Positions 6,643-63,979 of a stretch of DNA of 64,000 nt are shown here, one piece after another. The stretch's first letter is position 1, and the number at the start of each line of letters is the position of its first letter. The DNA lies in IMG/VR virus record IMGVR_UViG_3300028654_000001, positions 124,001 to 188,000 of that record. The stretch is one strand, 5' to 3'. A program made the position numbers and the translations under genes. The notes beneath the pieces were generated by a model, which did not search any database, was not told the origin of the DNA, and saw only the letters and a list, made by a program, of their open reading frames with translations.

Positions 6643-7161
6643 TCACTCATCACTAGGGCCGTACAACCCCTCAATAACCTTCTGGACGTGTATTCCATTC
6701 TCAGTCCTAGGAATGAAGAGTACGATCCGTAACCTATTGAATTTGTATAGAGTATACTGCTCGAGAGTGGTGTCAGCCTTTACAATGTCAGCCTTTGGGT
6801 CAAGGTTCTCCAGGTGATTCACCCGGTCTATGTGGTAGAGTGCCTTGTTTAGGTCAATCACGCTTGCAAATTTGATGATTGTACCCTCGAAGTTACATCG
6901 AACTGGCAACCCAGTAGACGATCCCTTGTAGCACCCAAATAGTTCAGGACTTGTTGGGTAGAATCTCCATTGAGATTCGTGACTCCAAGATTCGAATGCC
7001 CAAGGAGTACCTTCCTGACAGTTGGTAGTTATCCCATTGCTTTGGAGGGTAGTGCAGATGTCCTTAGGTGTGACTTCTATAGTATTAGAGTACCAGCTAA
7101 ATCCTAGGTTGGATAGGCCAATCAGGACGACTGCTAGTAGACTGAGTGCTTTGGTTGCCAT
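6643..7161 (-). CDS. secreted or membrane-anchored hypothetical
   Basis: N-terminal hydrophobic segment ALSLLAVVLIGL; start placed by the promoter motif. Confidence 0.8.
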   Translation of the reverse strand: MATKALSLLAVVLIGLSNLGFSWYSNTIEVTPKDICTTLQSNGITTNCQEGTPWAFESWSHESQWRFYPTSPELFGCYKGSSTGLPVRCNFEGTIIKFASVIDLNKALYHIDRVNHLENLDPKADIVKADTTLEQYTLYKFNRLRIVLFIPRTENGIHVQKVIEGLYGPSDE

Positions 7162-7169
7162 GTCACTCA

Positions 7170-7198
7170 ATACTACATATCGGGGGTTAGGATCTCAC
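7170..7198 (-). promoter_or_regulatory. class-I promoter motif
   Basis: GTGAGA-N17-TAGTAT, ATG 8 nt downstream. Confidence 0.75.
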
Positions 7199-7211
7199 TA
7201 CTTATTCTGGA

Positions 7212-7505
7212 TTAGGCCTCCCCGACAACCGACTTCCCACCAAAGATGTTGTCCCAGTTCTCCCGGTAGGCTCGACTGTTGACCAGGGGAGGTCTACCGA
7301 CGGGCTCCTCTGATATGATCCTGTGAAGAGGACCTTCAACCCTCTCAAGGTGGAGCTTGGCATCAAAAATACCACCAGGGACTGACTCCAAGTCCCGATA
7401 GAGCCTACCTGACTGGACCCCGTTCTCGTCAATATGAAGGGCCTTGCACCCACCCTCAATTTCTGGGCCTAAGACAACATAACCCTTGTCATCGTCATCT
7501 TTCAT
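7212..7505 (-). CDS. hypothetical protein
   Basis: ORF track; ends AYRENWDNIFGGK. Confidence 0.7.
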   Translation of the reverse strand: MKDDDDKGYVVLGPEIEGGCKALHIDENGVQSGRLYRDLESVPGGIFDAKLHLERVEGPLHRIISEEPVGRPPLVNSRAYRENWDNIFGGKSVVGEA

Positions 7506-7552
7506 TGGGATCCGCCACAACAACCCTACGTGAAACAAACAGAGTTGTCAAA

Positions 7553-7876
7553 TTACTTGACGAGTCGAAGTTTACGAGGTTGCTTGACTTCATTTACCCT
7601 CATCCTTCTCGGTCCCTCGTAGTCAGTGCAAACCTCGGAAGACTTCAGATCCCGTCTGACCCAAAGTTGATCAGCGGTGTTGACAGTAATCGATAAGACA
7701 TCGGTTTTATGAAACTTCCCATAGAAGCACCTCACTATGTGGTCCCTGAAGCACTTGCTAACCCAATGGAGGGCAAATTGCTCCTCATCTGGCGACTTAT
7801 CGATGCTCTTCTTAAGATCTTCACCTATGTTGACTCTATAGGGGTGGGGTCGCCACTTGCAGTCGTTGCAATTCAT
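7553..7876 (-). CDS. Cys-rich hypothetical ending in KLRLVK
   Basis: CNDC N-terminus; C-terminal LRLVK. Confidence 0.75.
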   Translation of the reverse strand: MNCNDCKWRPHPYRVNIGEDLKKSIDKSPDEEQFALHWVSKCFRDHIVRCFYGKFHKTDVLSITVNTADQLWVRRDLKSSEVCTDYEGPRRMRVNEVKQPRKLRLVK

Positions 7877-7885
7877 TTGGGTGAC

Positions 7886-8131
7886 TCAGGGCTCCTCGAA
7901 GATGTGGAGCTTGCCAACAGGAACGTCCTCACAACGCACCGTAGCCATCGTCTGGAGACTGGTACCCCAACCAGAGGTAGCGAAGCATATAGGTGCCCCA
8001 GGGTACTTCATGAAGGTAATGCTGTTAGGAGTCGGATTCCTTGACCTGTAGCTCAGGTAGGCCACTAGAATGGAAAGTGTCCCAACAATTACCAAACCAA
8101 CTATCAACTTTACTCTGAACATACTGATCAC
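7886..8131 (-). CDS. small membrane-anchored protein
   Basis: N-terminal hydrophobic helix LIVGLVIVGTLSILVAYL. Confidence 0.75.
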   Translation of the reverse strand: MISMFRVKLIVGLVIVGTLSILVAYLSYRSRNPTPNSITFMKYPGAPICFATSGWGTSLQTMATVRCEDVPVGKLHIFEEP

Positions 8132-8496
8132 ATCCCTAGGTTCTCCAACTCGAGTAAGATCTGGTCAGGCTCATTGGTTAACCTAGTGGCAGTTATACGC
8201 CTACGACTAAGACTCTGAAAGTAACTCCATAACGGACCTGAAGGTGTTTTACTTGCATCCGATCGTTTGATCATGAACAACATACCACAAGAGCACTTGA
8301 ACCATATCTCTTGTTCCACTACGGTGATTTCTCCGTGGCCTTGAAAACTATGGTTAGCAGCTGCACGCAATAAAATAGGAATAGTGGTGAAGGTTGGTAT
8401 CCCAAGATTAGCCTCAGGCACCTTGGGGGATGCTGGTGGGAGTCGACCAGGACGGATCACCATCCACATAGATTCGATGTCATCGTCCTGAGTCAC
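8128..8496 (-). CDS. hypothetical with N-terminal IESYW-type tag
   Basis: MTQDDDIESMWMVIRP; H...CSC zinc-like motif. Confidence 0.85.
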   Translation of the reverse strand: MTQDDDIESMWMVIRPGRLPPASPKVPEANLGIPTFTTIPILLRAAANHSFQGHGEITVVEQEIWFKCSCGMLFMIKRSDASKTPSGPLWSYFQSLSRRRITATRLTNEPDQILLELENLGM

Positions 8497-8603
8497 TTAC
8501 CCCCCAAGTACTCGAGTACGCAGCATCTGTAGTGGTGCGGATCATACCCAGCTTGAAAGCTGAACTGCCTATGACAGTAAGTGTCCTGTACAAGATAGAT
8601 CAT
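8493..8603 (-). CDS. 36-aa micro-ORF
   Basis: Manual translation MIYLVQDTYCHRQFSFQAGYDPHHYRCCVLEYLGGK; stop overlaps the GTG of the next gene. Confidence 0.45.
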   Translation of the reverse strand: MIYLVQDTYCHRQFSFQAGYDPHHYRCCVLEYLGGK

Positions 8604-9821: not shown

Positions 9822-9845
9822 GTTAGGGGTGAGTACACCGATTGA

Positions 9846-10922: not shown

Positions 10923-11174
10923 TCAGTTGGGCTTAGCTTCCTCGAATTGAGCGAGGACGGTGGTCAGCTCTCGAAGAGTCCCGTGAGCTTCTTCTGGGGC
11001 CTCTGGGGTTATCCAGTCCTGTAGTGCGGACAGGTGAAGCTTAGCCTTTTCGACTAGGGCTTGCCTGCGGGAACCTTCAGCCTGCGAGGCTTCCATGAGG
11101 AGTTTACTAGCTACATCGGCGTGGACTTCGGCTCTAGCTTGGGCAGGATCAATTGGATTTCTTGTCTGGGTCAT
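10923..11174 (-). CDS. hypothetical helical protein
   Basis: ORF track; 8 nt from the upstream gene. Confidence 0.7.
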   Translation of the reverse strand: MTQTRNPIDPAQARAEVHADVASKLLMEASQAEGSRRQALVEKAKLHLSALQDWITPEAPEEAHGTLRELTTVLAQFEEAKPN

Positions 11175-11182
11175 GATCAGGA

Positions 11183-11635
11183 TTACGTAGCAGCTTCAGT
11201 TTCCTCACCATCTTCGTTTGGTTTTGGTAGTTGTTCCGAGGACACCAACTCCTCAGCAAGATCACTCATGACCTCTTCACCAGTGATATAGGGTCTTCCG
11301 GTGATGTGTCCGATCAGTTCGGCCACAACTACGGCATCAGGGGTTCTAAGACCTAGTTTCTCCCCTACATAGGCCCAATGTAAGAGTTGACCGTTGTTCG
11401 TTATCAAAGCCGAGGGGCGTGGTTCTTGATTCAGTGACGTCACCAACCAACACTTCTCCGAAACCCCCATCAAGTCCTTAGCCCCATCACTAAAACTCGT
11501 GAGTTCCGTGAACATCAAGTCATATTTTGTACCATTTCCCGGACAGTAACTAACAAATGTACAAGCCCCACTTACCTCCTTGCGCTTGATTCCAGACTCA
11601 ACAGTAGGCATAGTTCGAACATCTAATAGTGGCAT
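11183..11635 (-). CDS. hypothetical protein
   Basis: ORF track; TTGAGT-N17-TAAACT lies 8 nt upstream of the ATG. Confidence 0.8.
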   Translation of the reverse strand: MPLLDVRTMPTVESGIKRKEVSGACTFVSYCPGNGTKYDLMFTELTSFSDGAKDLMGVSEKCWLVTSLNQEPRPSALITNNGQLLHWAYVGEKLGLRTPDAVVVAELIGHITGRPYITGEEVMSDLAEELVSSEQLPKPNEDGEETEAAT

Positions 11636-14508: not shown

Positions 14509-14907
14509 TCAGGGGTTTGGGTTAGTAGTGAGGAGGGCTCGGACATGACGGGCTCGTGTTTCCCAGGCTTCTTCACTCACCCACCTGTGGTGAATGACAG
14601 AAGCCCCAGAGGAAGGCCCGTGCTTGATCTTAGGAGCATCGGCTACTCGCGCTTGTTGCTCCTTTGCATACTTCCTCCACTTGGCCTCAAATAGGGCTAA
14701 GGTAACTTCAACGTCCTTACCCCGAGCTATGCAGGCGTAGGTATCGGCTAGCATACCGTGAATGGGGGCTTCGGCTACATCCGTTCCCGACCATGACTTG
14801 TAAGCAGCGGTCTCAGCATCCCGTTCATAACGAGCAACTTGTAGGAGATACTCAGCATTCGCGGGTGGGGTAACCTCAGGTAGTGCCTCATATTCAGCTT
14901 GATTCAT
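14509..14907 (-). CDS. hypothetical protein
   Basis: ORF track; AAGGAG SD upstream. Confidence 0.8.
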   Translation of the reverse strand: MNQAEYEALPEVTPPANAEYLLQVARYERDAETAAYKSWSGTDVAEAPIHGMLADTYACIARGKDVEVTLALFEAKWRKYAKEQQARVADAPKIKHGPSSGASVIHHRWVSEEAWETRARHVRALLTTNPNP

Positions 14908-14953: not shown

Positions 14954-15034
14954 TTATGGGTTTTTGACCGCTTCGGTACCGGTCATTCCATCGAGGGAGA
15001 GCCTCGATTCCCAGCTGTCTTTCCAGCCCGTCAC
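14954..15034 (-). CDS. 26-aa micro-ORF under a class-I promoter
   Basis: GTG 6 nt after the -10 element; MTGWKDSWESRLSLDGMTGTEAVKNP. Confidence 0.35.
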   Translation of the reverse strand: MTGWKDSWESRLSLDGMTGTEAVKNP

Positions 15035-15040
15035 GCCTTA

Positions 15041-15069
15041 ATATTACGGATGAGAGCTCTGAGTCTCAG
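15041..15069 (-). promoter_or_regulatory. class-I promoter motif
   Basis: CTGAGA-N17-TAATAT. Confidence 0.65.
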
Positions 15070-16618: not shown

Positions 16619-16936
16619 CTATTGAACGACAGCGGGTGCCTTCAAGAACTCGATTTCGATGTTCTCGGTGGGGTCCCCATTGTGAAAGCGAGTGAATGGA
16701 TCTGACAGCCGATTGATATGCCGAGCATTGAGGGAAAAGGTGTACTGACCGTAGAATCCACGACCTACCCGAACCTTGAAGGATACCCGAACCTGATGGC
16801 TGTAGTCGGCGCCTAGCGGCCTGACCTCGGTTACCTCAAGAGTGGTACCCTTGGTGATCCCAAAGGCCTTGCACCCCTTGCGGACGTAGACAATGCAACC
16901 AGGGATAATCGTAGGGGAGGTGGTTGAAGTGGTCAT
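16619..16936 (-). CDS. hypothetical SH3-like protein, leaderless
   Basis: ATG 5 nt after the class-I -10 element. Confidence 0.8.
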   Translation of the reverse strand: MTTSTTSPTIIPGCIVYVRKGCKAFGITKGTTLEVTEVRPLGADYSHQVRVSFKVRVGRGFYGQYTFSLNARHINRLSDPFTRFHNGDPTENIEIEFLKAPAVVQ

Positions 16937-16941: not shown

Positions 16942-16970
16942 ATACTACGTGTGAGAGGTTAGGATCTCAC
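16942..16970 (-). promoter_or_regulatory. class-I promoter motif
   Basis: GTGAGA-N17-TAGTAT-N5-ATG. Confidence 0.8.
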
Positions 16971-18631: not shown

Positions 18632-18889
18632 CTACCAAGTTTTTGCTCGTACAACCCAGCTCTTGGAGTCGAGCCAGGCTCGAAGCGTGTCCCAGGAGCA
18701 ATTATCAGACTTTGGATTCTCTCTGAAGTAGAGAGCATAGACATCGTCGAAGGTCATGTCCTTATCTCTGACCTTGAGCGGTGGTTGGGGATCGGATAGA
18801 TCAAGGATGCCCTCGGGGGTACGCTTCTCCAGGATGACTTTCTGGTTACCGGTGAAGGGTTGGGCACCTAGGTTTGGGTTTAATGTCAT
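18632..18889 (-). CDS. hypothetical protein
   Basis: ORF track; coupled. Confidence 0.7.
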   Translation of the reverse strand: MTLNPNLGAQPFTGNQKVILEKRTPEGILDLSDPQPPLKVRDKDMTFDDVYALYFRENPKSDNCSWDTLRAWLDSKSWVVRAKTW

Positions 18890-19203
18890 ATAGAATCTAG
18901 CTCAAGGGATAGTAGTGTCATCCGACTTCTGGATGACAGCGGTTGGGGGTCAAACATTGGATCGGCAAGGACTATTGAAGCCTCAGAGGTTGTGCTCCAC
19001 TGGTCCTCAAGTTCACGGGCAACTTGAAGGTAAAGGTGAGCTTCTTGGGGTGCTTGAAGAGCATTATCATAGGCTGCCAAGCATTGTCGGCGAGCCTCGA
19101 TGACTGGATCCTGATCCTCAAAGGGTGTTGCCTCTACGTTCAAATCCCAAGCTTCGGAGCTAAGGCTACGAGCTCGGATGATTAGTTGACTTAGCGACCT
19201 CAT
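18886..19203 (-). CDS. hypothetical helical protein, leaderless
   Basis: ATG 5 nt after the class-I -10 element. Confidence 0.8.
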   Translation of the reverse strand: MRSLSQLIIRARSLSSEAWDLNVEATPFEDQDPVIEARRQCLAAYDNALQAPQEAHLYLQVARELEDQWSTTSEASIVLADPMFDPQPLSSRSRMTLLSLELDSI

Positions 19204-19208: not shown

Positions 19209-19237
19209 GTACTACAAGTGATAGGGTTGGATCTCAC
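19209..19237 (-). promoter_or_regulatory. class-I promoter motif
   Basis: GTGAGA-N17-TAGTAC-N5-ATG. Confidence 0.8.
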
Positions 19238-19249: not shown

Positions 19250-19852
19250 TTATTTGGTCCTAGTAACTTCTACCACCTTGGAGGGGCTTACGGTGACAGT
19301 GAACTTCTTAGGTTTATAGGTTCCGAGGTGAATAGTGTAGCTACCGGGCACGAACTTGTCCGAGAACGTCTCATCGCATATGGACCGATTGGTATTGACG
19401 CGCATACCCTTCCCATGGGCCAGAACGAAGTCGACTGCTACACTCTCTTGAGCCCTCTTCTCACGGTCCTCAACCGTATCCCACAAGTGATAGACCTTCT
19501 TGTCCTGATGGGCAGTCTTGAACTGAGCAGCCGCCTCACAGCAGGCAAGAATGAACTTAATTCGGTTGGTTACTAGATCTAGGTCATCGGATGCTTGACT
19601 CTGGTGACTAACTGTCACCCTTAGGGTGGATTGAAGAAACTCATTCCCAGCCGCATCCTTGATTAGTACCTTCCCAGCACCAAAGGTGACCGTCCACTCA
19701 GCGGTGATAGTGCAATCGGTACCAAACTTTTTGAGAGTAATGTAGGTTGGATAGTCTCGAATCTTCTCAGCTCCATCGATCACTAGTGTTTGGAGTGAGG
19801 TGGCAAGATCAACGTTCGCTTTGGCGAGGTTGTCGAGTTCGAGGTGGGTCAT
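19250..19852 (-). CDS. hypothetical protein, leaderless
   Basis: ATG (MTHLELDN) 5 nt after the class-I -10 element. Confidence 0.8.
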   Translation of the reverse strand: MTHLELDNLAKANVDLATSLQTLVIDGAEKIRDYPTYITLKKFGTDCTITAEWTVTFGAGKVLIKDAAGNEFLQSTLRVTVSHQSQASDDLDLVTNRIKFILACCEAAAQFKTAHQDKKVYHLWDTVEDREKRAQESVAVDFVLAHGKGMRVNTNRSICDETFSDKFVPGSYTIHLGTYKPKKFTVTVSPSKVVEVTRTK

Positions 19853-19857: not shown

Positions 19858-19886
19858 GTATTACGTGCAAGTAAGGTTGATCTCAT
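19858..19886 (-). promoter_or_regulatory. class-I promoter motif
   Basis: ATGAGA-N17-TAATAC-N5-ATG. Confidence 0.8.
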
Positions 19887-19972
19887 CAAGTTACCCAATA
19901 AATTAGAACTCCAAAGAAAGTATGTTACGTTTTGGTTATAAGCTGTCACTTTTTACGCGTCAACTCAAGCCC

Positions 19973-20123
19973 TGTCATGGGGTGCTGAGGGGTGTCATGG
20001 GGTGCTGTGAGGCCTGCACGAAATAATACTTTCGGCCTGATTTACTTGGCAACCAGATTTCTTAGGGGTCCTAAAAATCAATGTGCCAAGGTGTGCCGAC
20101 AGGTGCCTGAAATTACTAGGCAC
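19973..20123. repeat. helically phased direct repeats
   Basis: TGTCATGGGGTGCTG at 19973 and 19993; GTGCC at 20083, 20093 and 20103; inverted GGCAC at 20119. Confidence 0.7.
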
Positions 20124-20184
20124 TCTCGATAGCGGGCAACACACCCTAAACCTCTGTATTAACCTTCAACCAATGTAACGAAAC

Positions 20185-20270
20185 GGCCGGCCCTGGGTTA
20201 CAGTCAACGGGAAATCCAAGTACGGATCCTTGGGTACAATAACGAGAACCGCAGATACCCAGGACAGGCC
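20185..20270 (-). ncRNA. candidate structured RNA / long hairpin
   Basis: GGCCGGCCCTGGGT pairs with ACCCAGGACAGGCC; internal CCAAG/CTTGG stem; arms related to 35604-35645. Confidence 0.35.
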
Positions 20271-20507: not shown

Positions 20508-20536
20508 TTGAGATCCCTCCACTTGAAACGTAGTAT
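20508..20536 (+). promoter_or_regulatory. class-I promoter motif
   Basis: TTGAGA-N17-TAGTAT-N5-ATG. Confidence 0.8.
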
Positions 20537-23147: not shown

Positions 23148-23176
23148 GTACTACACTTGAGAGTGCTAGATCTCAC
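23148..23176 (-). promoter_or_regulatory. class-I promoter motif
   Basis: GTGAGA-N17-TAGTAC-N8-ATG. Confidence 0.8.
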
Positions 23177-24143: not shown

Positions 24144-24172
24144 AGACTACACATGAGGTAGGTAGATCTCAC
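24144..24172 (-). promoter_or_regulatory. class-I promoter motif
   Basis: GTGAGA-N17-TAGTCT-N5-ATG. Confidence 0.75.
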
Positions 24173-31243: not shown

Positions 31244-31272
31244 GTACTACGTGTGAAAGGTCCGGATCTCAC
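31244..31272 (-). promoter_or_regulatory. class-I promoter motif
   Basis: GTGAGA-N17-TAGTAC-N5-ATG. Confidence 0.8.
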
Positions 31273-32231: not shown

Positions 32232-32260
32232 ATATTACGCGTGAGGGGTTAGAATCTCAA
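32232..32260 (-). promoter_or_regulatory. class-I promoter motif
   Basis: TTGAGA-N17-TAATAT-N5-ATG. Confidence 0.8.
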
Positions 32261-32314
32261 CTTTTTCTTCAAAATATATGACTAGGCCATCAAGTCGGTG
32301 TACCCCTAGGTATC

Positions 32315-33253: not shown

Positions 33254-33282
33254 GTATTACGTATGAAGGGTACAATTCTCAA
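33254..33282 (-). promoter_or_regulatory. class-I promoter motif (leadered)
   Basis: TTGAGA-N17-TAATAC, then SD-like AAGAAGGGA before the ATG. Confidence 0.7.
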
Positions 33283-33480: not shown

Positions 33481-33509
33481 GTGAGATCCAAACGGCTCAA
33501 GCGTAGTAC
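33481..33509 (+). promoter_or_regulatory. class-I promoter motif
   Basis: GTGAGA-N17-TAGTAC-N5-ATG. Confidence 0.8.
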
Positions 33510-34290: not shown

Positions 34291-34319
34291 GTGAGATCTA
34301 AACACCTCAAACGTAGTAC
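34291..34319 (+). promoter_or_regulatory. class-I promoter motif
   Basis: GTGAGA-N17-TAGTAC-N5-ATG. Confidence 0.8.
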
Positions 34320-36047: not shown

Positions 36048-36076
36048 ATAGTACGCGTAAGTGGCTCTGATCTCAT
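36048..36076 (-). promoter_or_regulatory. class-I promoter motif
   Basis: ATGAGA-N17-TACTAT-N5-ATG. Confidence 0.75.
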
Positions 36077-37461: not shown

Positions 37462-37490
37462 GTACTACCAATGAGACCCTCTAATATCAC
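37462..37490 (-). promoter_or_regulatory. class-I promoter motif
   Basis: GTGATA-N17-TAGTAC-N5-ATG. Confidence 0.75.
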
Positions 37491-39195: not shown

Positions 39196-39230
39196 AAGAG
39201 CCTCCTTCTCCTATCTACACCTCATAAAAC

Positions 39231-41979: not shown

Positions 41980-42061
41980 GCTGAAGATTCTTTCATAGGA
42001 ACATTATTAGTACTCATCCCTGTGTAAACCACTTCAGTAGTGGTCCGGTGTAGTAGCTTGA

Positions 42062-43030: not shown

Positions 43031-43059
43031 GTGAGAATCAGAGGTCCCACCCGTAGTAT
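43031..43059 (+). promoter_or_regulatory. class-I promoter motif (leadered)
   Basis: GTGAGA-N17-TAGTAT. Confidence 0.7.
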
Positions 43060-46687: not shown

Positions 46688-46709
46688 GAGCTAAGCTACA
46701 CCGGAGACG

Positions 46710-47631: not shown

Positions 47632-47659
47632 GGGTCTCCTTGAGGGTAGCTACACCAAA

Positions 47660-51213: not shown

Positions 51214-51297
51214 GCCTTCTTCTTGGCCGGCTTCGGGCCTACTGCATAGTACACCGGAAGATTGACTTTACAAGCCATTTTGGTGTAACTAAGGCCT

Positions 51298-53242: not shown

Positions 53243-53269
53243 AGGGGTAACTACACCAGCGCAATGACG

Positions 53270-53881
53270 CTACCCATACAAAACTCTACCACCGTGTTTT
53301 CCACGAAGGATTCTGTTGGTTAGCGTACTTGACGGGATGCCAAGTTTCCGCCCCCACCTTGCCGCTGTCATTCGGACCCCTTGGAAAGTAATCAAGCATG
53401 ACTTGCGACGGTTATTTGCGCTCTCTTCCATTGTTACCCATAAGGTATTTTTCTTAGTATACCCCTTAGTGACATTCTTGCGTCCCAGTCGCTTACCTTC
53501 GGGCCTTTTTCCCATGTCTTCGATGAAATTTTCGAATTGGTACCACCTCCTGCAGACAGTGATTCCAACCCCACCGTACCGAGGCCAGTTAGCATCGTTC
53601 TGGTTTCTGCACCGTGATAGCATCGAAGACCAGACTTTGTACTCAGGCGCCCTTTTACGTCGGGAGTACCCATGGCGTACTGGTCTACCTCTACCTTCTT
53701 TTAAAAGGCATCCGCATGACCGGCTACGGTTAGACTTGATCGAAGATTCCTGAACGTAACGGACAGTACCGCATTGGCACCGGCACCGAACAAACTTACG
53801 ATTCCGACCGCTCAGTGACTTGACACAAGTTGGCCCAATGACTTTCCAACGAGATATCGTCATTCCTCTTCTTTGTGGCAA
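53270..53881 (-). CDS. phage HNH-type homing-endonuclease-like protein
   Basis: VRCRCQCG...SRSCGC; EYKVWSSMLSRC...YGGVGITVC..W..FENFIEDMG.RP; C-terminal TxAxWxRKLGI HTH. Confidence 0.85.
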   Translation of the reverse strand: MPQRRGMTISRWKVIGPTCVKSLSGRNRKFVRCRCQCGTVRYVQESSIKSNRSRSCGCLLKEGRGRPVRHGYSRRKRAPEYKVWSSMLSRCRNQNDANWPRYGGVGITVCRRWYQFENFIEDMGKRPEGKRLGRKNVTKGYTKKNTLWVTMEESANNRRKSCLITFQGVRMTAARWGRKLGIPSSTLTNRILRGKHGGRVLYG

Positions 53882-54936
53882 GCTTGGTAAGCCAAGATAT
53901 TGAGCTTGTTAGTGACATTCTTCAGGTTAGTCTCAGCCTTTTTCCTGGCTAAGTGGCGCTTAGTAGCCTCCCCAACGAAGATCATATCCATCTCAGCAAA
54001 ATAGATCTTACAGGTCCAGGTGTCATCTTTTTGCTGTTCAGTCAGCCGTATGCCAACACCATCGAAGGTAGCCTTGTCGGCAACCGTCTGAACCATTTGG
54101 TAACCCAACCAGCTCAGGTAGATGGGTTTGATCACCAAAGGCTTCACCTTGACTGGTTTCTTAGCCTTGACTGGTTTCTTAGCCTTGACTGGCTTAATCT
54201 TGGCACTGCTTGGTTGGACCACCGCCGATGCGGGATTCTTCTTGGCTTTCTTCTTCTTTTCCTGCACAGGCTTCCAGGCTTGACCAAAGTACGGACTGTC
54301 CTCAGTCAAACTAACACTATCTCGGGTAGGTCTCTCAAACAACGGGCGGTGCTGAGATAGCTGAAACCTGATGTAGTGAACCTCATCATCGGATGCTGGC
54401 ATCAACCCAGCCTCCTTCAGTCTCGTATGGACCTCCACCAGTGACAGAGTTTCATTTCCGATCACTCGCTGAATATTCCGTATGAAGTTCGACGGACTTG
54501 CCGGATTGCCTCCAATGCTCTCCTCAGGTTTAGTAACAGGCAGCTCGGGTTCAATGTCCAGTACCCTAGGGTTATCCTCAACCTCTATGGTTACGGTGTC
54601 TTGTGGAGCAGAAACCAAAACAAGAGTTGGAGTCTGAGCTTGAAGCTCTTCTGTTTCGGGGTTTGAGTCCATTGAGTTGATCATCTGTTGAATCTCTTTC
54701 CGTCTTTTACGCTTGGCTTCGGCATCCTCGATCCGAAGCCGCTCAGCTTCCAAGCTAGCAGTTTCATGGTCTTCAAATAGGACATCTCTACTAGCAACGA
54801 AACAATAGCGCTCTTTGACCAACTCTACAACTACTGGATTACGTGGGACAACTTTCAGCTCTTCCCCATCCGTACCATCCCGGAGGATGTTCACCTGGTC
54901 GACTGTCCCTGGTCCCGCGAGGTAACAAGATTGCAT
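53860..54936 (-). CDS. multi-domain protein with winged-helix and K/A/P-rich linker
   Basis: LSLVEVHTRLKEAGL; KPVKAK x3. Confidence 0.8.
   Translation of the reverse strand: MQSCYLAGPGTVDQVNILRDGTDGEELKVVPRNPVVVELVKERYCFVASRDVLFEDHETASLEAERLRIEDAEAKRKRRKEIQQMINSMDSNPETEELQAQTPTLVLVSAPQDTVTIEVEDNPRVLDIEPELPVTKPEESIGGNPASPSNFIRNIQRVIGNETLSLVEVHTRLKEAGLMPASDDEVHYIRFQLSQHRPLFERPTRDSVSLTEDSPYFGQAWKPVQEKKKKAKKNPASAVVQPSSAKIKPVKAKKPVKAKKPVKVKPLVIKPIYLSWLGYQMVQTVADKATFDGVGIRLTEQQKDDTWTCKIYFAEMDMIFVGEATKRHLARKKAETNLKNVTNKLNILAYQACHKEEE
54147..54195 (-). repeat. 18-nt tandem coding repeat (KPVKAK)
   Basis: CCTTGACTGGTTTCTTAG x2.7 on the + strand. Confidence 0.9.
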
Positions 54937-54942: not shown

Positions 54943-54971
54943 GTACTACGCATGGGAGCAGCAAAACTCAA
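54943..54971 (-). promoter_or_regulatory. class-I promoter motif
   Basis: TTGAGT-N17-TAGTAC-N6-ATG. Confidence 0.75.
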
Positions 54972-55465: not shown

Positions 55466-55555
55466 CTGAAAGTAATACACCCCAACTCAAGTCTGGAATT
55501 CAATACTTAGTAGATTTTGGCAGGTTGTCCAACCATCCCCGGTGTACTGAGAGTC

Positions 55556-58054: not shown

Positions 58055-58160
58055 GAAGTCCAGCTCAGAATCAGCTTTTTTGTACACCGGTTACCCATTA
58101 CACCGAATGCCCCAAGAACGCAAGATATTGGGCTTCGGTGTAAACAGCCTGCTGTAAACA

Positions 58161-59021: not shown

Positions 59022-59741
59022 TCACATTCCCCAGAAGTTGATGTCCATGATTCCGCCACGTTTGCTGAGCTTAATGCCAAATGGCCTCTCACAAATGATG
59101 ATATTCTTGCTGTTCACCACGTAGAGAGCATAGGCTGACTTCAGGAACTTGACAGCTGCCGCTAGGATCTCCGAGTCGTGCTCGCTGTACTTGACCCCTT
59201 CGAGACCCTGGCAGAAGTGGTAGTGGGCAATGAAGGGCAGTGAGGACATCGCTGACAGGATGGACACCTTTGCTGAGTCACATAGCGGTCGGCACATCTC
59301 AAATGGCATGTCCGAGATCAGCAGAGGAGACATCCAATTAACCATTCTGCTCATGACCATTTGATGATTGGCAGCCCCAATTGCCTGAATGATTGCAGGT
59401 TCGACACTGATGGATAGCTTATTAGCTATGGTATCCGGAGTCCCCTGCACACTCTGATCTTTCATGGCTTCGTAAGCACTAAGTGGATTGGACTTCCAAG
59501 TGATCTGATACCCAGAGTCCAGAATGTCCCTCATGAGAACAACAGCCGCTTCCTCTGCTAGCTGGATGTCTTCGGTATCAAGAACCTCAGAGGTGGCGTA
59601 ACCCATGAACTCGGCTCTGACTACCTCCAAGCGTGCTTCCTCCGAAGCAGGTAGGTTGGGTCGGTAGTCTCCAATGACGTTTGGGTACTGCTGAGAGTAA
59701 GGGAGATTGTAGGGTTTCACTTTAATAGTAACGTTTTTCAT
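59022..59741 (-). CDS. hypothetical protein
   Basis: 239-aa ORF; coupled. Confidence 0.8.
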   Translation of the reverse strand: MKNVTIKVKPYNLPYSQQYPNVIGDYRPNLPASEEARLEVVRAEFMGYATSEVLDTEDIQLAEEAAVVLMRDILDSGYQITWKSNPLSAYEAMKDQSVQGTPDTIANKLSISVEPAIIQAIGAANHQMVMSRMVNWMSPLLISDMPFEMCRPLCDSAKVSILSAMSSLPFIAHYHFCQGLEGVKYSEHDSEILAAAVKFLKSAYALYVVNSKNIIICERPFGIKLSKRGGIMDINFWGM

Positions 59742-60172
59742 GAGTTTGCCTTCAGGATATCATTCAAGTCGGCTTCTGCCCAGTAGCCACCAGCACCTGG
59801 CCACACAACCTTCGGAGATGTGGGTCGGACGTAATCCTTCCGAAATGCACTCCCTTGAGTATAGAAGGTGCTTCCAGCGTTAACGTGATCTACCGTAATA
59901 CTGTAAGTCCTACCAGCGGGCTTCGGGTCTTTCCCTACCACCTTGACAATGGTCCCCTTGGGAATGACAATGGTCTGCCCCTTCTTGATTGGAAGGTCCT
60001 CTTCCCGGTAGTACCCTAGGAACTGAGGGGGCCGCGTGCCAACTTTGAGCTCGTCTCTGTCATACAAGCCTACGAGGTAACCCTCTTCATACTCAGGGCT
60101 GGTCTGCTCTGGGTCTTGATCTTTCCCGTAGAAGGCATCCATGTAACCTTGGTGAATTGGGCTTGTGTACAT
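59738..60172 (-). CDS. hypothetical, untagged leaderless paralog of 45406-45864
   Basis: IPKGTIVKVVGKDPKPAG...GGYWAEA. Confidence 0.85.
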   Translation of the reverse strand: MYTSPIHQGYMDAFYGKDQDPEQTSPEYEEGYLVGLYDRDELKVGTRPPQFLGYYREEDLPIKKGQTIVIPKGTIVKVVGKDPKPAGRTYSITVDHVNAGSTFYTQGSAFRKDYVRPTSPKVVWPGAGGYWAEADLNDILKANS

Positions 60173-60177: not shown

Positions 60178-60206
60178 GTATTACGCACCAGAGTCCTGAT
60201 TCTCAC
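60178..60206 (-). promoter_or_regulatory. class-I promoter motif
   Basis: GTGAGA-N17-TAATAC-N5-ATG. Confidence 0.8.
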
Positions 60207-61155: not shown

Positions 61156-61421
61156 GCGGCGACCGTTCCCGGATGATCCTTGAGCCACTCATTGGCTTCA
61201 CCCTCGTCACAGAAGTTGGCGTAGGCAAACCCGCTCTGGTCACCAAAGACACAGAAAGTCTCGTATCCTTCGTCCCACTCCACATACCGGCCCTCGCCGG
61301 CAATGGGCTTCAAGTCCTTCAGCTTCGATTCCTCACGAAGTTCTTGGATGCTCTCCCCGGCCTTTTTGTAGGAACGCCCTCTCCAAGCTCTCTTTTCAGG
61401 GTTGTGGGTTCTACTTGCCAT
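61152..61421 (-). CDS. hypothetical protein
   Basis: VFGDQSGFAYANF motif. Confidence 0.75.
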   Translation of the reverse strand: MASRTHNPEKRAWRGRSYKKAGESIQELREESKLKDLKPIAGEGRYVEWDEGYETFCVFGDQSGFAYANFCDEGEANEWLKDHPGTVAA

Positions 61422-61761
61422 GATGATTCCTTGACACTTTCTTGTAATTTGCTACTAAACGAAGATGAAGTCTAGTCATCCTATCCCCGTTGCTACAGCC
61501 AAACCGCTTGGCCGTATACTGAGCGGCGATACTTGAAGGACACCCGCTAGCAGAGATCAGGTGGCACTCGCACCCTGACGTCCAAGCTATCGGGGTCGGG
61601 ATTTCACACTTGGGGTCTCCGTCAAAGACAACCCCACTGAAAGCCAGACCAGGCCTTCCGTCGTCCAGTATCCACTGTTTTCCAGTCCAACGCTCAACTC
61701 GTTGCGCATTAGCTGGGGGGCGGCCGATCCAGTGACTTTGATTGATTTTCAGTGCGTGCAT
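61411..61761 (-). CDS. hypothetical protein
   Basis: AGAGGA SD before the ATG. Confidence 0.65.
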   Translation of the reverse strand: MHALKINQSHWIGRPPANAQRVERWTGKQWILDDGRPGLAFSGVVFDGDPKCEIPTPIAWTSGCECHLISASGCPSSIAAQYTAKRFGCSNGDRMTRLHLRLVANYKKVSRNHHGK

Positions 61762-61798
61762 GGATCCTCTAGAGGTCAAACTTATGAGGTTCTGTTAG

Positions 61799-61827
61799 GT
61801 ATTACAAGCCACTCACACGAAACTCAC
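61799..61827 (-). promoter_or_regulatory. class-I promoter motif (leadered)
   Basis: GTGAGT-N17-TAATAC. Confidence 0.7.
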
Positions 61828-61907: not shown

Positions 61908-62327
61908 ATGCCTCAAGGAAGATCTTCCTATAAAAGGCGGGGGCGGTCAGTCCCCCTTAGAGCTCGAGTTATCGACTTAGATCCAGCCGGCTGTGGTGAG
62001 GTTCAGGTGGGTAGTGTGGTGATCCATCAGGATAATCGGGGGGAGCATATCGCGATCCTACTCGACCTGGATGCTCAGTACGCGATGGCACTATTCTTCA
62101 GCTCAGTGGCCTATGGGCTTTGCTCCCGTGAGGCCGCTCTTGAAGAATTAGCTTTAGCCGGATTCGTTTATACCAAGCAGACCTTCTTGTGCTTGGTTCA
62201 CCGCCAGGCCAATGAGTTCTACCCTCACCAGGGGCTTGAGTTCCCAGCTCATAGAGTTCAAGCTCTCCGAAAGGAATTCGGGATTGACCGAGAGGCAATC
62301 AGTGGGGTTAGGCCTCTTCAGCCTTGA
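61908..62327 (+). CDS. hypothetical protein
   Basis: ORF track; SD upstream. Confidence 0.75.
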   Translation: MPQGRSSYKRRGRSVPLRARVIDLDPAGCGEVQVGSVVIHQDNRGEHIAILLDLDAQYAMALFFSSVAYGLCSREAALEELALAGFVYTKQTFLCLVHRQANEFYPHQGLEFPAHRVQALRKEFGIDREAISGVRPLQP

Positions 62328-62850
62328 TGCGTGCTAAGTAGGCCGCGGCATTCTCAGGGGGTTCAGCTTCGTGGCTCTCGGAGATTACCTTCTTAGCCAT
62401 AATGAGGGCCTCATTTTGGGTATCATATGGGATATCATCCCATAATGAGGTTCCGTCAATCTCATCAACGGTCTGAATGTAGATCTTACCTTGGTCATCG
62501 TGGACAAGCCGTACTTCAACGTCAATGGCCGCTGGGTGTCCCTGATCTATCTGTTCTTGGTTGCAAGCATAAACGTAAGACCCAACTGTCGACCATTCAC
62601 TCTCGATGATGACGGGTTCAGAGCCCTCTTCCTCAATAGTCTCCTCTTGGTACTCTAGGCTGGACTCTGGGACGAACAGACCCCGTTGCGGGCCGTTGTC
62701 GGTCTCTATGGTTTCCTCCAGTTCAACAACATAGAACCAGAGGGGTACCAGGAACTGGATACCGAGAACGGTTCCAGGAAATAGTTGCCCTCCGTTGATA
62801 ACATTCACGGGCTCATCAATTTCAAACTTTGGGTCGGCCATTAAATCCAT
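62308..62850 (-). CDS. acidic two-domain hypothetical (SH3-like N-terminus)
   Basis: PKFEIDEPV...PGTV...YVVELE. Confidence 0.75.
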   Translation of the reverse strand: MDLMADPKFEIDEPVNVINGGQLFPGTVLGIQFLVPLWFYVVELEETIETDNGPQRGLFVPESSLEYQEETIEEEGSEPVIIESEWSTVGSYVYACNQEQIDQGHPAAIDVEVRLVHDDQGKIYIQTVDEIDGTSLWDDIPYDTQNEALIMAKKVISESHEAEPPENAAAYLARIKAEEA

Positions 62851-63070
62851 ATTACGAATGAGGAGGAAGCATCTCAACCACTTTTTGATCTTTGATCGCG
62901 TTTTCGTCTCCAAGGACTAATGTCAATGAAGGGCCAAAGTGGTATGGCCCCCTCTTCAATACCAACCCTCTCCGCGAATATGCAAGCATTCTCAGAGTAT
63001 ACTTCGTTCACAACCCTTGAAAACTTAGTGTTATCACTGCGTTGGAAGTTAATCTTGAAGGTTCTTATCC

Positions 63071-63292
63071 TCAACATTTGACAATCCTAGAGAATACAAA
63101 TCCGTCGGTTGATTCTGACAGTAGGAGCTTTTGACCAACAACCAGCTCAGGGTACTTCCGAACATCATCCTCAGTTATGGTGAAACTATATACATTATCC
63201 TCTTGGTTATCGGCTAAGCCCTGAAGGGCTCTGTCCCAAAATTCTGGGACATACCCTGGCTCACCTTCGAACTTACCTGACTCGCTACTCAT
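63071..63292 (-). CDS. hypothetical phage protein
   Basis: GKFEGEPGYVPEFWD...STDGFV motif; AGGAG SD. Confidence 0.8.
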   Translation of the reverse strand: MSSESGKFEGEPGYVPEFWDRALQGLADNQEDNVYSFTITEDDVRKYPELVVGQKLLLSESTDGFVFSRIVKC

Positions 63293-63309
63293 TTCTAGCT
63301 CCTACCCAA

Positions 63310-63338
63310 GTATTACGTGTAGAAGATACTTTTCTCAA
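63310..63338 (-). promoter_or_regulatory. class-I promoter motif (leadered)
   Basis: TTGAGA-N17-TAATAC. Confidence 0.7.
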
Positions 63339-63372
63339 CATTTTTCTCAACTTACCGGTGTTATGAGACACC

Positions 63373-63603
63373 ATGGCTGACCTAGACGATGACGAAGATG
63401 TGGTACTCAAGGTTGGTGATCGGGTAAACCTCAACACAGAGGAGGGTCCCGATATGGTGGTCTCCAAAATAGAGATTGTTAATGGAGTATCAGCAGTATC
63501 CTGTATTTGGTTTGAAGATCATAGACCTGGCGGGAATGAGAGCCCAATCTGGGTTCTAAAAAAAGAAGTCTTCCCTCTTGAGGTATTGAGTATCCTAGAT
63601 TAG
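63373..63603 (+). CDS. YodC/DUF2158-like protein
   Basis: LKVGDRVNL..GPDMVV...CIWF...KEVFPLEVL. Confidence 0.8.
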   Translation: MADLDDDEDVVLKVGDRVNLNTEEGPDMVVSKIEIVNGVSAVSCIWFEDHRPGGNESPIWVLKKEVFPLEVLSILD

Positions 63604-63945
63604 TTAGGGTTTCCATCCTTTCGGCGGTTTCCACCCGGCGGCGAGCGCTGTCTTAGCTACAGCCTTGATCCTTGTGAGAGCTGTTCGAGCCCCTGATTGA
63701 CTCTCCCACCAGAAACCGGTAGAATCATGGCCTTGAGTGTCCTGATCTCCTTCTTTGATGACCTGGAAACCGGCCTTCTCATAGGCCCAGTATTCACGGG
63801 AGTCTTGATCCTTCGGGACCTTATTAGAGGGCTCCCTCTTTGATTGACCAAGAAAACCTCCTGTATCAAATATATCATCATCCAATTGCCATTGGATTCG
63901 GAACTCTGCCTGTCGGTCCTCAACAACAACTAACTTATCAGCCAT
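63604..63945 (-). CDS. hypothetical protein, leaderless
   Basis: ATG 5 nt after the -10 element; ends AGWKPPKGWKP. Confidence 0.8.
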   Translation of the reverse strand: MADKLVVVEDRQAEFRIQWQLDDDIFDTGGFLGQSKREPSNKVPKDQDSREYWAYEKAGFQVIKEGDQDTQGHDSTGFWWESQSGARTALTRIKAVAKTALAAGWKPPKGWKP

Positions 63946-63950
63946 AACCA

Positions 63951-63979
63951 GTATTACACGCTAGAAGCACGATCCCCAC
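63951..63979 (-). promoter_or_regulatory. class-I promoter motif (variant -35)
   Basis: GTGGGG-N17-TAATAC-N5-ATG. Confidence 0.7.

What the first reader, a model, noticed from the sequence alone, without database searches (positions are those of the whole stretch)
7161..63979. A 21-site promoter motif defines a largely leaderless regulon
Seen: (G/T/A)TGAG(A/T)-N17-TARTAY, with a conserved G just before the -10 element, occurs 21 times on both strands with exact 17-nt spacing. The start codon follows 5 nt later in 13 cases, 6 nt in 2 and 8 nt in 2, with no room for a Shine-Dalgarno; the other 4 are leadered. Established: transcription starts about 6-8 nt after the -10 hexamer, and leaderless mRNAs use a distinct 70S initiation route (e.g. 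lambda cI; common in Actinobacteria). Inference: a strong early regulon, read by a host or phage sigma factor with a GTGAGA -35, whose first cistrons are translated without SD or canonical initiation and may resist host translation shut-off.
Basis: partly seen in the sequence, partly recalled or inferred. Interest (0 to 1): 0.8.

Follow-up and report, generated by a model that had tools for sequence, protein, structure and literature searches.

The report
Leaderless promoter regulon in a megaphage
A 512-kb uncultivated phage carries dozens of copies of a conserved promoter placed so close to the ATG that most first genes must be made from mRNAs with no leader; the pattern is real, but it runs through the whole genome and is a new example of a known way of expressing genes.

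Summary
The strict pattern occurs 17 times against 0.14 expected. A weight-matrix scan separates 22 sites (scores 23.7-43.5) from noise (12.5 or less). Spacing is exactly 17 nt. The start codon follows the second hexamer by 5 nt in 13 sites, 6 in 2, 7 in 1 and 8 in 2; four sites have leaders. The window is bases 124001-188000 of a 512,571-bp phage contig.

In 136 kb of that genome I found 38 sites, and 17 more in three related huge phages. In the relatives both hexamers and the gap to ATG are kept while the spacer drifts. The motif is tripartite: an A/T-rich upstream stretch, (G/T)TGAGAT, CTCA, then CGTArTAy. Its -10 part is not TAnnnT, because the last base is C in 23 of 38 sites.

Leaderless geometry is not special to this motif. 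A second class, yyGGTGTA with no -35, also sits 4-8 nt from start codons (23 of 80 occurrences against 4% in controls). Shine-Dalgarno sequences are rare and overlapping stop/start junctions are common.

One class-1 operon outside the window encodes an IF-1 homologue. No sigma factor or RNA polymerase gene appeared in about 150 kb. The reading factor, the timing and the host remain unknown. Best reading: a sigma-70-type promoter class driving leaderless transcripts.

The parts
7170..7198 (-). Class-1 promoter. ATG at 7161 (gap 8); gene 6643-7161.
11180..11208 (-). Degenerate class-1 site (GTGAGG-N17-TAATCC). ATG at 11174 (gap 5); gene 10923-11174.
   Evidence: score 11.3, near the noise level; kept because of the ATG spacing
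15041..15069 (-). Class-1 promoter (CTGAGA). GTG at 15034 (gap 6). It opens a 26-codon ORF that coincides with the conserved 68-nt RNA element. The next gene, 14509-14907, has a Shine-Dalgarno sequence.
14965..15032 (-). 68-nt three-hairpin element at the 5' end of the transcript from site 15041.
   Evidence: Nearly identical in four genomes. A second copy in the same genome has two compensatory pairs. No Rfam match.
16942..16970 (-). Class-1 promoter. ATG at 16936 (gap 5); gene 16619-16936.
19209..19237 (-). Class-1 promoter. ATG at 19203 (gap 5); gene 18886-19203.
19858..19886 (-). Class-1 promoter. ATG at 19852 (gap 5); gene 19250-19852. Divergent from the 20508 site.
20508..20536 (+). Class-1 promoter. 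ATG at 20542 (gap 5); gene 20542-20874, superinfection-exclusion gp17-like.
23148..23176 (-). Class-1 promoter. ATG at 23139 (gap 8); gene 22828-23139.
24144..24172 (-). Class-1 promoter (-10 TAGTCT). ATG at 24138 (gap 5); gene 23872-24138.
31244..31272 (-). Class-1 promoter. ATG at 31238 (gap 5); gene 30717-31238.
32232..32260 (-). Class-1 promoter. ATG at 32226 (gap 5); gene 31282-32226.
33254..33282 (-). Class-1 promoter with an 18-nt leader (GAAGGG). ATG at 33235; gene 32603-33235.
33481..33509 (+). Class-1 promoter. ATG at 33515 (gap 5); gene 33515-33682.
34291..34319 (+). Class-1 promoter. ATG at 34325 (gap 5); gene 34325-34585. The public gene call on the opposite strand is probably wrong.
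36048..36076 (-). Class-1 promoter (-10 TACTAT). ATG at 36042 (gap 5). The ORF is only 36 codons here and shifts frame relative to the 103-aa orthologue.
37462..37490 (-). Class-1 promoter (-35 GTGATA). ATG at 37456 (gap 5); gene 37100-37456.
43031..43059 (+). Class-1 promoter with a 59-nt leader containing a conserved hairpin. ATG at 43119; gene 43119-43688.
54943..54971 (-). Class-1 promoter. ATG at 54936 (gap 6); gene 53860-54936.
60178..60206 (-). Class-1 promoter. ATG at 60172 (gap 5); gene 59738-60172.
61799..61827 (-). Class-1 promoter, leadered (ATG at 61761, 37 nt; or TTG at 61779). ORF 61411-61779, not called in public annotations.
62849..62877 (-). Class-1 promoter. ATG at 62841 (gap 7); gene 62308-62841.
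63310..63338 (-). Class-1 promoter with a 17-nt leader carrying GGAG. ATG at 63292; gene 63071-63292.
63951..63979 (-). Class-1 promoter (-35 GTGGGG). ATG at 63945 (gap 5); gene 63604-63945.
9830..9839 (-). Class-2 motif GGTG-TAnnnn. ATG at 9821 (gap 8).
32297..32306 (+). Class-2 motif. ATG at 32315 (gap 8). Conserved in L004.
39212..39221 (-). Class-2 motif with a 16-nt leader carrying a Shine-Dalgarno sequence. ATG at 39195.
42047..42056 (+). Class-2 motif. GTG at 42062 (gap 5). The GTG is conserved in the relative.
46693..46702 (-). Class-2 motif. ATG at 46687 (gap 5); GNAT acetyltransferase gene.
47647..47656 (-). Class-2 motif with a 15-nt leader carrying a Shine-Dalgarno sequence (ATG at 47631). 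The orthologue in the relative is leaderless (gap 6).
51282..51291 (+). Class-2 motif. ATG at 51298 (gap 6).
53248..53257 (-). Class-2 motif. ATG at 53242 (gap 5).
55472..55481 (-). Class-2 motif. ATG at 55465 (gap 6).
55541..55550 (+). Class-2 motif. ATG at 55556 (gap 5).
58095..58104 (-). Class-2 motif. GTG at 58087 (gap 7).
58137..58146 (+). Class-2 motif with a 14-nt leader (ATG at 58161). Gap 8 in the relative.

Best explanation
The motif is a promoter class of a roughly 512-kb uncultivated phage. Its architecture is that of promoters read by a bacterial multisubunit RNA polymerase carrying a sigma-70-family factor. It has an A/T-rich UP-like stretch, a -35-like (G/T)TGAGAT, a conserved CTCA at about -19 to -16, and a -10-like CGTArTAy exactly 17 nt after the -35 hexamer.

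In about four fifths of the sites the ATG lies 4-8 nt (mostly 5) after the -10. Transcription should therefore start on or within about 3 nt of the A of ATG, and the first cistron would be translated from a leaderless mRNA. Downstream cistrons would be translated mostly by stop/start coupling without a Shine-Dalgarno sequence.

The class is concentrated in a roughly 130-kb arm of the genome full of small unknown genes, which is compatible with an early or early-middle class. It coexists with a second leaderless promoter class (yyGGTGTA, -10-only). Leaderless initiation is thus the general expression mode of this phage, and by inference of its unknown host.

The -10 part lacks the T at -7 that primary sigma factors need. 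I therefore think a phage-encoded or phage-modified specificity factor is somewhat more likely than the unmodified host primary sigma.

Shown: the motif, its statistics, geometry, orientation and conservation. Inferred: promoter function, start sites, leaderless translation, timing and the reading factor.
For: - Enrichment: 17 exact hits against 0.14 expected.
- Separation: clean bimodal weight-matrix scores.
- Spacing: exactly 17 nt; N16 and N18 are empty.
- Logo: an A/T-rich upstream stretch, G at -13 in 22 of 22 sites, and a CTCA element.
- Orientation: every site faces the adjacent gene. Divergent pairs sit at strand switches, 19858/20508 and 33254/33481.
- Abundance: 38 strong sites in 136 kb of the same genome, 32 of them with a start codon 4-8 nt after the -10. 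There are 17 more in three relatives, 14 with that geometry.
- Conservation: ten orthologous pairs keep the -35 (92% identity) and the -10 (78%, with changes staying inside the consensus), while the spacer (62%) and upstream sequence (51%) drift. The ATG distance is kept.
- Coding start: differences just after the ATG are synonymous in the frame set by that ATG (34325 gene, 36042 gene).
- Leaders: the motif also occurs with 17-59-nt leaders, some carrying GGAG, so it acts independently of the ATG.
- Genome-wide style: GGAG/GAGG upstream of only 28 of 120 genes (about 10 by chance). 34 of 92 co-directional junctions overlap.
- 'GTA' begins 12 nt upstream of the start codon in 13 of 59 first genes and 0 of 61 internal genes.
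- Class 2: 23 of 80 occurrences against 4.1% in controls.
- Precedent: a -10 element adjacent to ORFs is an experimentally validated leaderless expression pattern in Deinococcus-Thermus (PMC12340547) and is common in mycobacteria (PMC4633059).
Against: - There are no transcription start data of any kind, so promoter function and leaderlessness rest on geometry and conservation.
- The -10 part is not TAnnnT. Its last base is C in 23 of 38 sites and its third and fourth bases differ from TATAAT. This is atypical for a primary sigma.
- No sigma-70-family or RNA-polymerase gene was seen among the called genes of about 150 kb of the genome. About 360 kb was not examined.
- No excess of intrinsic terminators marks operon ends.
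- TGAG...CTCA is an inverted repeat, so part of the conservation could belong to a regulator site and not to polymerase contacts.
- At site 15041 the 'start codon' is probably the 5' end of a structured RNA.
- The host is unknown. A CRISPR-repeat search gave nothing.
Confidence: 0.7

Rival explanations
1. These are host-read early promoters. The motif is simply the phage's optimised version of the host primary-sigma promoter, as T4 early promoters are for E. coli. No phage factor is involved.
For: - TTGAGA is one base from TTGACA, the spacer is the canonical 17 nt, and there is a UP-like A/T stretch.
- The genes served are small unknown ORFs plus a superinfection-exclusion-like gene, which is typical early content.
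- No phage sigma was found in about 150 kb.
- Phage early promoters are known to be more uniform than host promoters (own knowledge of T4 and T5).
Against: - The last -10 base is C in 23 of 38 sites. Positions 3-4 are (G/A)T, not TA. The T at -7 is nearly invariant for group-1 sigma factors (established knowledge).
- The preferred first -35 base is G (25 of 38).
- A simple sigma-70 consensus scan finds no excess of canonical promoters.
Confidence: 0.3
2. The motif is read by a phage-encoded RNA polymerase of the kind jumbo phages carry, not by a sigma-70-family holoenzyme.
For: - The consensus is very uniform and lineage-specific, as for phiKZ and AR9 polymerase promoters (PMC5312081, PMC8244752).
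- The -10 is non-canonical.
- The second class (yyGGTGTA) is a short single-block motif like the AR9 and phiKZ late promoters (PMC5312081).
Against: - A bipartite layout with an exact 17-nt, sequence-free spacer and a UP-like stretch is the signature of sigma region 4, sigma region 2 and the alpha C-terminal domain contacts. Known phage polymerases do not read promoters of this layout (own knowledge).
- No RNA-polymerase subunit Pfam hit in about 150 kb.
- phiKZ and AR9 transcripts have 26-491-nt leaders (PMC5312081, PMC8244752).
Confidence: 0.12
3. The conserved block is mainly an operator. A dimeric phage regulator binds the inverted repeat TGAGA-N8-TCTCA that overlaps the -35 and spacer. 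This would coordinate repression or activation of all these units, like the phiC31 repressor sites or the stoperators of cluster A mycobacteriophages.
For: - Positions 15-20 (tCTCAc) are the reverse complement of positions 1-6 (GTGAGA), and CTCA is conserved at a fixed place in window and non-window sites.
- There is no base-pair covariation between the arms, as expected for protein recognition and not for a hairpin (sites listed).
Against: - The right arm is much weaker than the left (0.7-1.3 against 1.5-2 bits).
- CTCA lies where sigma region 3 contacts an extended -10, so it needs no separate protein.
- The -10 part and the exact spacing are as conserved as the repeat, so promoter function is needed anyway. 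This reading adds to the main one; it does not replace it.
- No helix-turn-helix regulator was identified in the window.
Confidence: 0.15
4. The motif works at the RNA level as a 'start-associated sequence'. It would be a processing or ribosome-recruitment signal inside long polycistronic transcripts, placed at a fixed distance before the ATG. The closest analogy is the start-associated sequences of cluster K mycobacteriophages.
For: - The distance to the ATG is fixed in most sites.
- Sites lie between co-directional genes with no terminators, so read-through RNA would contain them.
- GUGAGA/UCUCAC could form a 6-bp stem.
Against: - There is no compensatory covariation in the putative stem (site list).
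- The spacer sequence is free but its length is exact, which fits protein-DNA recognition.
- About one site in six has a leader of 17-59 nt or more, where a fixed-distance RNA signal would be useless.
- Sites at divergent strand switches have no upstream transcript to sit in (19858/20508, 33254/33481).
Confidence: 0.05

Closest known systems
Leaderless genes with a -10 element adjacent to the ORF in Deinococcus-Thermus and Actinobacteria (PMC12340547; PMC4633059)
   Same: A -10 element lies a few nucleotides before the ATG. There is no room for a Shine-Dalgarno sequence. An optional -35 sits at 17 nt. Leaderless genes coexist with GGAG-leadered genes.
   Different: There the -10 is TANNNT, read by the host primary sigma, and promoters are diverse. 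Here it is GTArTAy, with C as often as T at the last base, and it sits inside a 30-bit uniform motif in a phage.
Phage temporal-class promoter consensuses (T4 early/middle/late, SPO1 gp28 and gp33/34, phiEco32 gp36; own knowledge)
   Same: Dozens of near-identical, phage-specific promoters define a gene class. A bipartite class and a -10-only class coexist in one genome.
   Different: Those transcripts are leadered and use Shine-Dalgarno sequences. The factor reading the present motif is unidentified.
Thermus phage phiYS40 leaderless middle and late transcripts, and lambda cI from PRM (own knowledge, not checked in the library)
   Same: Phage mRNAs start at the A of AUG. The host phylum is leaderless-proficient in the phiYS40 case.
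   Different: The consensus is different. phiYS40 is 152 kb with a known host. Lambda has a single leaderless gene.
Jumbo-phage promoters of phiKZ and AR9 (PMC8244752, PMC5312081)
   Same: A large phage with highly uniform class-specific promoter motifs found first by over-representation.
   Different: phiKZ and AR9 motifs are single-block, read by phage polymerases, and give 5' UTRs of 26-491 nt. No leaderless phiKZ transcript was detected.
Start-associated sequences of cluster K mycobacteriophages (own knowledge)
   Same: A conserved motif at a short fixed distance upstream of many start codons.
   Different: Start-associated sequences contain a Shine-Dalgarno-like core and are thought to act in translation. 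The present motif has promoter anatomy and leaves no leader.

Membership tests
Sigma-70-family bipartite promoter | Two hexamers separated by 17 +/- 1 bp of free sequence | tested here: met
   All sites have exactly 17 nt. N16 gives one chance hit and N18 none. The spacer is mostly unconserved.
Sigma-70-family bipartite promoter | A -35 hexamer resembling TTGACA | tested here: met
   (G/T)TGAGA matches 4-5 of 6 positions, and TGA is invariant.
Sigma-70-family bipartite promoter | A -10 hexamer TAnnnT with A at -11 and T at -7 (the primary-sigma type) | tested here: not met
   TA is invariant, but the last base is C in 23 of 38 own-genome sites. Positions 3-4 are (G/A)T. No alternative register gives TAnnnT.
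Sigma-70-family bipartite promoter | Transcription by a sigma-bearing holoenzyme starting 5-9 nt after the -10 | not testable with these tools
   There are no 5'-end data.
ECF-sigma promoter | A -35 with a GAAC/AAC core and a -10 with a CGT core, about 16-17 nt apart | tested here: not met
   CGTA is present at the -10, but the -35 is TGAGA (no AAC). The distance from the hexamer to CGTA is 14-15 nt.
Leaderless mRNA | The transcript 5' end lies at or within a few nucleotides of the start codon | not testable with these tools
   The geometry is compatible: the start codon is 4-8 nt after the -10 in 32 of 38 sites.
Leaderless mRNA | The ATG next to the promoter is the real translation start of a conserved ORF | tested here: met
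   The ATG position is conserved in orthologues. Substitutions right after it are synonymous in its frame. The exception is site 15041, where an RNA element is more likely.
Leaderless mRNA | AUG (rarely GUG) as the 5'-terminal codon | tested here: met
   17 ATG and 1 GTG among the 18 window sites. ATG is 89% of all starts in the window, so this does not discriminate.
Bacteroidota promoter (-33 TTTG / -7 TAnnTTTG) | A TAnnTTTG block close to the start site | tested here: not met
   Only partial resemblance (TAGTATTG in a few sites). Position 5 is A in 21 of 22 sites and class 2 has no TTTG.
Early temporal class | Expression immediately after infection, independent of phage protein synthesis | not testable with these tools
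   Only the gene content is suggestive: small unknown ORFs, a gp17-like gene and an IF-1 homologue.

The most novel reading that the evidence does not exclude
A lineage of huge phages has built its whole expression programme on leaderless mRNAs. These would be read from two phage-specific promoter classes by a so far unrecognised phage specificity factor. The class-1 regulon itself supplies a diverged IF-1 that biases ribosomes toward 5'-AUG phage messages, a combined transcription-translation takeover route not yet described for jumbo phages or megaphages.
Probability: 0.15. Interest if true: 0.8.

Novelty: new member of a known kind. Interest (0 to 1): 0.55.

Why it matters
Huge phages are known almost only from metagenomes, and nothing is known about how they are transcribed.

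- **Annotation.** A motif that marks about 40 transcription units, with a second class marking at least 20 more, gives an operon map. It corrects gene starts and strands. For example, 34325-34585 lies on the strand opposite the public call, and several public starts are extended into the promoter.
- **Host.** Systematic leaderless starts, rare Shine-Dalgarno sequences and frequent stop/start overlaps say something about the unknown host's translation apparatus.
- **Translation genes.** An IF-1 homologue sits in a class-1 operon and is conserved in a 303-kb relative. This makes the proposed role of phage translation genes in huge phages testable against a defined set of leaderless messages.

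Tried and rejected
- **Identity by DNA.** Megablast of 20 kb against GenBank phages found nothing. tblastn found only a weak tail-fibre-like N-terminal match to a 595-kb uncultured phage.
- **Function.** Pfam and PHROGs on about 50 proteins, plus precomputed Pfam for all called genes, left nearly all as unknowns.
- **Canonical signals.** There is no excess of consensus sigma-70 promoters or intrinsic terminators. There are no tRNAs and no Rfam families.
- **Motif in other phages.** The exact 15-base pattern hit six unrelated viral contigs once each. All fail the weight matrix, so they are chance matches.
- **Host.**
  - The 3' 20-mer of the CRISPR repeat hit only a coding region of a Verrucomicrobiota genome assembled from a metagenome, by chance.
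  - ESM Atlas neighbours of the GNAT and Cas7 proteins span many phyla.
  - The IF-1 homologue has only metagenomic, huge-phage relatives.
- **Sigma or polymerase.** I walked about 90 kb beyond the window with precomputed Pfam and found none. One look-up was wasted on an uncalled ORF, and one relative had no DNA available.
- **The 'faint Sigma70_r3' protein.** L031:4116-4892 is a helix-turn-helix-repeat (HNH_repeat) protein with a conserved C-terminal domain. It has no sigma region 2, so I rejected it as a sigma.
- **Hairpin reading of GTGAGA/TCTCAC.** Rejected, because the arms do not co-vary.
- **Alternative -10 registers.** No register restores TAnnnT.

Full report
**What the window is.** The window is positions 124001-188000, same orientation, of IMGVR_UViG_3300028654_000001, a 512,571-bp viral contig. 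An independent ENA assembly of 512,069 bp carries the same genes, so the genome is probably complete at about 512 kb. G+C is about 50% throughout.

Almost every protein is unknown. Across all called genes of the window the only family hits are:
- DUF4406
- a ProQ_C-like domain
- a superinfection-exclusion gp17-like protein
- a Macro domain
- a GNAT acetyltransferase
- an HNH endonuclease
- weak tail-fibre-like matches

. GenBank phages hold nothing similar at the DNA level.

Three related genomes were reached. One is a 145-kb contig from a Southern Ontario landfill leachate well, about 80% amino-acid identity (sample identified in bioRxiv 10.1101/2024.05.30.596742). The second is a 34-kb contig from the same sample. 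The third is a 303-kb contig from another study.

**The observation.** The strict pattern occurs 17 times against 0.14 expected. With one mismatch there are 24 hits against 4.8 expected. A weight matrix separates 22 sites (23.7-43.5) from all other positions and from shuffles (12.5 or less). Changing the spacer to 16 or 18 nt leaves one chance hit and none.

I add the sites at 15041 and, weakly, 11180.

**Anatomy.** The logo is longer than reported. In order it contains:
- an A/T-rich stretch
- TTG
- (G/T)TGAGAT
- a loosely C-rich spacer
- CTCA at motif positions 16-19
- CG
- TA(G/A)TA(C/T)
- T
- about four bases, then ATG

If transcription starts at the A of ATG, the elements lie at about -34 to -29, -19 to -16 and -13 to -6.

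Two points deserve emphasis. First, tCTCAc is the reverse complement of GTGAGA, so the -35 and the middle element form an inverted repeat. The arms do not co-vary, which argues against a hairpin. It leaves two options: a dimeric regulator site, or an extended -10-type contact.

Second, the -10 part is not TAnnnT. Its last base is C in 23 of 38 sites and its middle is (G/A)T. No other register repairs this.

**Evidence for function.** Every site faces the gene next to it, and divergent pairs sit at strand switches. In ten orthologous pairs between the window and the 145-kb relative, identity falls from the hexamers to the flanks:

| Region | Identity |
|---|---|
| -35 hexamer | 92% |
| -10 hexamer (changes stay within the consensus) | 78% |
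| spacer | 62% |
| upstream sequence | 51% |

The distance to the ATG is preserved. Substitutions just after the ATG are synonymous in the frame it sets. This also shows that the public gene call at 34307-34618 is on the wrong strand.

Outside the window the same genome has at least 16 more strong sites. The total is 38 in 136 kb sampled:

| Gap from -10 to start codon | Sites |
|---|---|
| 5 nt | 21 |
| 4 nt | 3 |
| 6 nt | 4 |
| 7 nt | 1 |
| 8 nt | 3 |
| leadered | 6 |

The relatives add 17 more sites.

Exact matches to one stringent version of the motif lie only between contig positions 54 and 163 kb. The 10 kb to the right of the window has a single site. The class therefore occupies one arm of the genome. 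Six single hits in unrelated viral contigs fail the matrix and are chance.

**Leaderlessness is genome-wide.** Only 28 of 120 called genes have GGAG or GAGG at -17 to -5 (about 10 expected by chance), and 8 have a five-base Shine-Dalgarno sequence. Of 92 co-directional junctions, 34 overlap, 21 of them as ATGA.

A second motif, yyGGTGTA, has no -35 and nothing conserved after the TA. It precedes ATG or GTG by 4-8 nt after the notional hexamer in 23 of 80 occurrences. Composition-matched hexamers do so in 4.1% of cases.

This class-2 motif is conserved at orthologous genes in the 145-kb and 303-kb relatives. It serves the GNAT gene and, outside the window, the OMP decarboxylase gene and other genes of that nucleotide-metabolism-rich stretch.

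The gene at 47173-47631 has a 15-nt leader with a Shine-Dalgarno sequence in the window. Its orthologue starts 6 nt after the motif. This is a natural swap between the two initiation modes.

Both classes share GTA beginning 12 nt before the start codon. That placement is seen in 13 of 59 first genes and 0 of 61 internal genes.

**What reads the motif.** I walked about 90 kb beyond the window using precomputed Pfam tables and found no sigma factor or RNA polymerase subunit. One protein flagged 'Sigma70_r3 (faint)' is a helix-turn-helix-repeat protein without sigma region 2. About 360 kb of the genome could not be examined.

The bipartite layout, the exact spacer and the UP-like stretch argue for a bacterial-type polymerase with a sigma-family factor. 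The non-canonical -10 argues against the unmodified primary sigma.

My rough split:
- host primary sigma: about 0.3
- phage-encoded or phage-modified specificity factor: about 0.4
- phage polymerase: about 0.12
- other: the remainder

These shares are judgement, not computation.

**A link to translation.** One class-1 unit at about 57 kb of the contig consists of a leaderless 101-codon ORF followed one base later by a 74-aa IF-1 homologue. It scores 61.3 bits against TIGR00008 (cut-off 61.15). The same promoter, ORF and IF-1 arrangement is present in the 303-kb relative. All close relatives of this IF-1 are metagenomic, several on contigs of 300-435 kb. Whether it favours 5'-AUG messages is speculation.

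**A caveat on 'start codons'.** At 15041 the GTG (ATG in the relatives) opens only 26 codons. The 68 nt that follow are almost identical in four genomes, while the flanks diverge. They fold into three hairpins. A second copy elsewhere in the same contig differs by five bases, four of which form two compensatory pairs; every stem substitution in the alignment keeps its pair, the fifth base lying in a hairpin loop. A covariance model finds no further copies in the DNA held, and Rfam has no match. With only five sequences the covariation is suggestive, not proven (24 of 500 shuffles reach it). This unit probably begins with a structured RNA.

**Comparison with what is known.** A -10 element next to the ORF as the signature of leaderless genes is experimentally established in Deinococcus-Thermus (PMC12340547). 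Leaderless transcripts are common in mycobacteria (PMC4633059). Phage-specific promoter consensuses that define temporal classes are classical.

The two jumbo phages with mapped transcriptomes, phiKZ and AR9, have leaders of 26 nt or more, and no leaderless phiKZ transcript was detected (PMC8244752, PMC5312081). Full-text searches found no report linking huge phages and leaderless expression.

I therefore file this as a new member of a known kind. It has a distinctive consensus and an unusually systematic use of leaderless starts.

**Verdict.**
Promoter function and leaderless geometry hold. Specificity of leaderlessness to this regulon does not hold.
- Early timing, the sigma identity and shut-off resistance are untested.
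- Interest is 0.55.

Noticed in passing
window 284-2269 (degenerate repeats to 2719); cas genes at L028:13555-19358, just left of the window: A CRISPR array of 28 identical 36-nt repeats ending in ATTGAAAC, with spacers of about 35-40 nt and degenerate trailer repeats. Next to it is a type I-C set (Cas5d, Csd1/Cas8c, Cas7, a ResIII helicase). cas5d has a canonical AGGAGG Shine-Dalgarno sequence and no class-1 or class-2 motif. The small '-' strand ORFs at 1183-2263 are artefacts of the repeats.
   Followed up: partly
window 14965-15032 (-); second copy L035:3618-3699 (-), contig about 26 kb; also L013, L033, L034: A 68-nt three-hairpin element at the 5' end of a class-1 transcript. It is nearly invariant in four genomes, with two compensatory pairs in the paralogous copy. 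No Rfam match. Candidate small RNA or regulatory leader.
   Followed up: yes
class-2 sites listed under parts (e.g. window 46693-46702, 53248-53257, 55541-55550); L032:4155, 6455, 7092, 8210: A second promoter-like class, yyGGTGTA, with no -35. It is also followed by ATG or GTG 4-8 nt after the notional hexamer and is conserved in relatives.
   Followed up: yes
L029:7342-7906 (contig about 56.7-57.3 kb); L033:9626-10225: A class-1 operon made of a leaderless ORF followed by a 74-aa translation initiation factor IF-1 homologue. The arrangement is conserved in a 303-kb relative.
   Followed up: partly
window 47631-47656 (-) versus L002:12515 (+): The same gene has a 15-nt leader with a Shine-Dalgarno sequence in the window but starts 6 nt after the class-2 motif in the relative.
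   Followed up: partly
window 35727-36042 (-): The leaderless ORF at 36042 stops after 36 codons. Its 103-aa orthologue (L004:5862-6173) continues in what is a different frame here (called ORF 35727-35999). This is a frameshift about 20 codons in, seen in three assemblies of this population. Function unknown.
   Followed up: partly
window 34307-34618: The public gene call is on the '-' strand. Promoter orientation and 6 of 6 synonymous differences from the relative indicate that the real gene is 34325-34585 on the '+' strand.
   Followed up: yes
window 19871-20541: A 671-nt gene-free region between divergent class-1 promoters. It contains a direct repeat, GTCATGGGGTGCTG, twice at about 19975-20010. 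Function unknown (regulatory region or origin?).
   Followed up: no
window 43060-43118 (+): The 59-nt leader of the 43031 class-1 unit holds a hairpin (ATCAGGT...ACCTGAT) that is conserved in the relative while the promoter spacer diverged.
   Followed up: no
window 33229-33257 (+): A near-consensus TTGACA-N17-TAGTAT site overlaps the 33254 class-1 site on the opposite strand. An ATG follows at 5 nt but opens only 7 codons. It could be chance or an antisense start.
   Followed up: no
window 53270-53863 (-): An HNH endonuclease-like gene (PHROG 374, E = 4.5e-46) overlaps the end of the class-1-driven 358-aa gene by 4 nt.
   Followed up: no
L031:4116-4892: A 258-aa protein with helix-turn-helix repeats (HNH_repeat, with a faint Sigma70_r3 hit) and a conserved C-terminal domain. 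It sits under a class-2 motif inside the class-1 arm. It is a DNA-binding candidate and not a sigma factor.
   Followed up: partly
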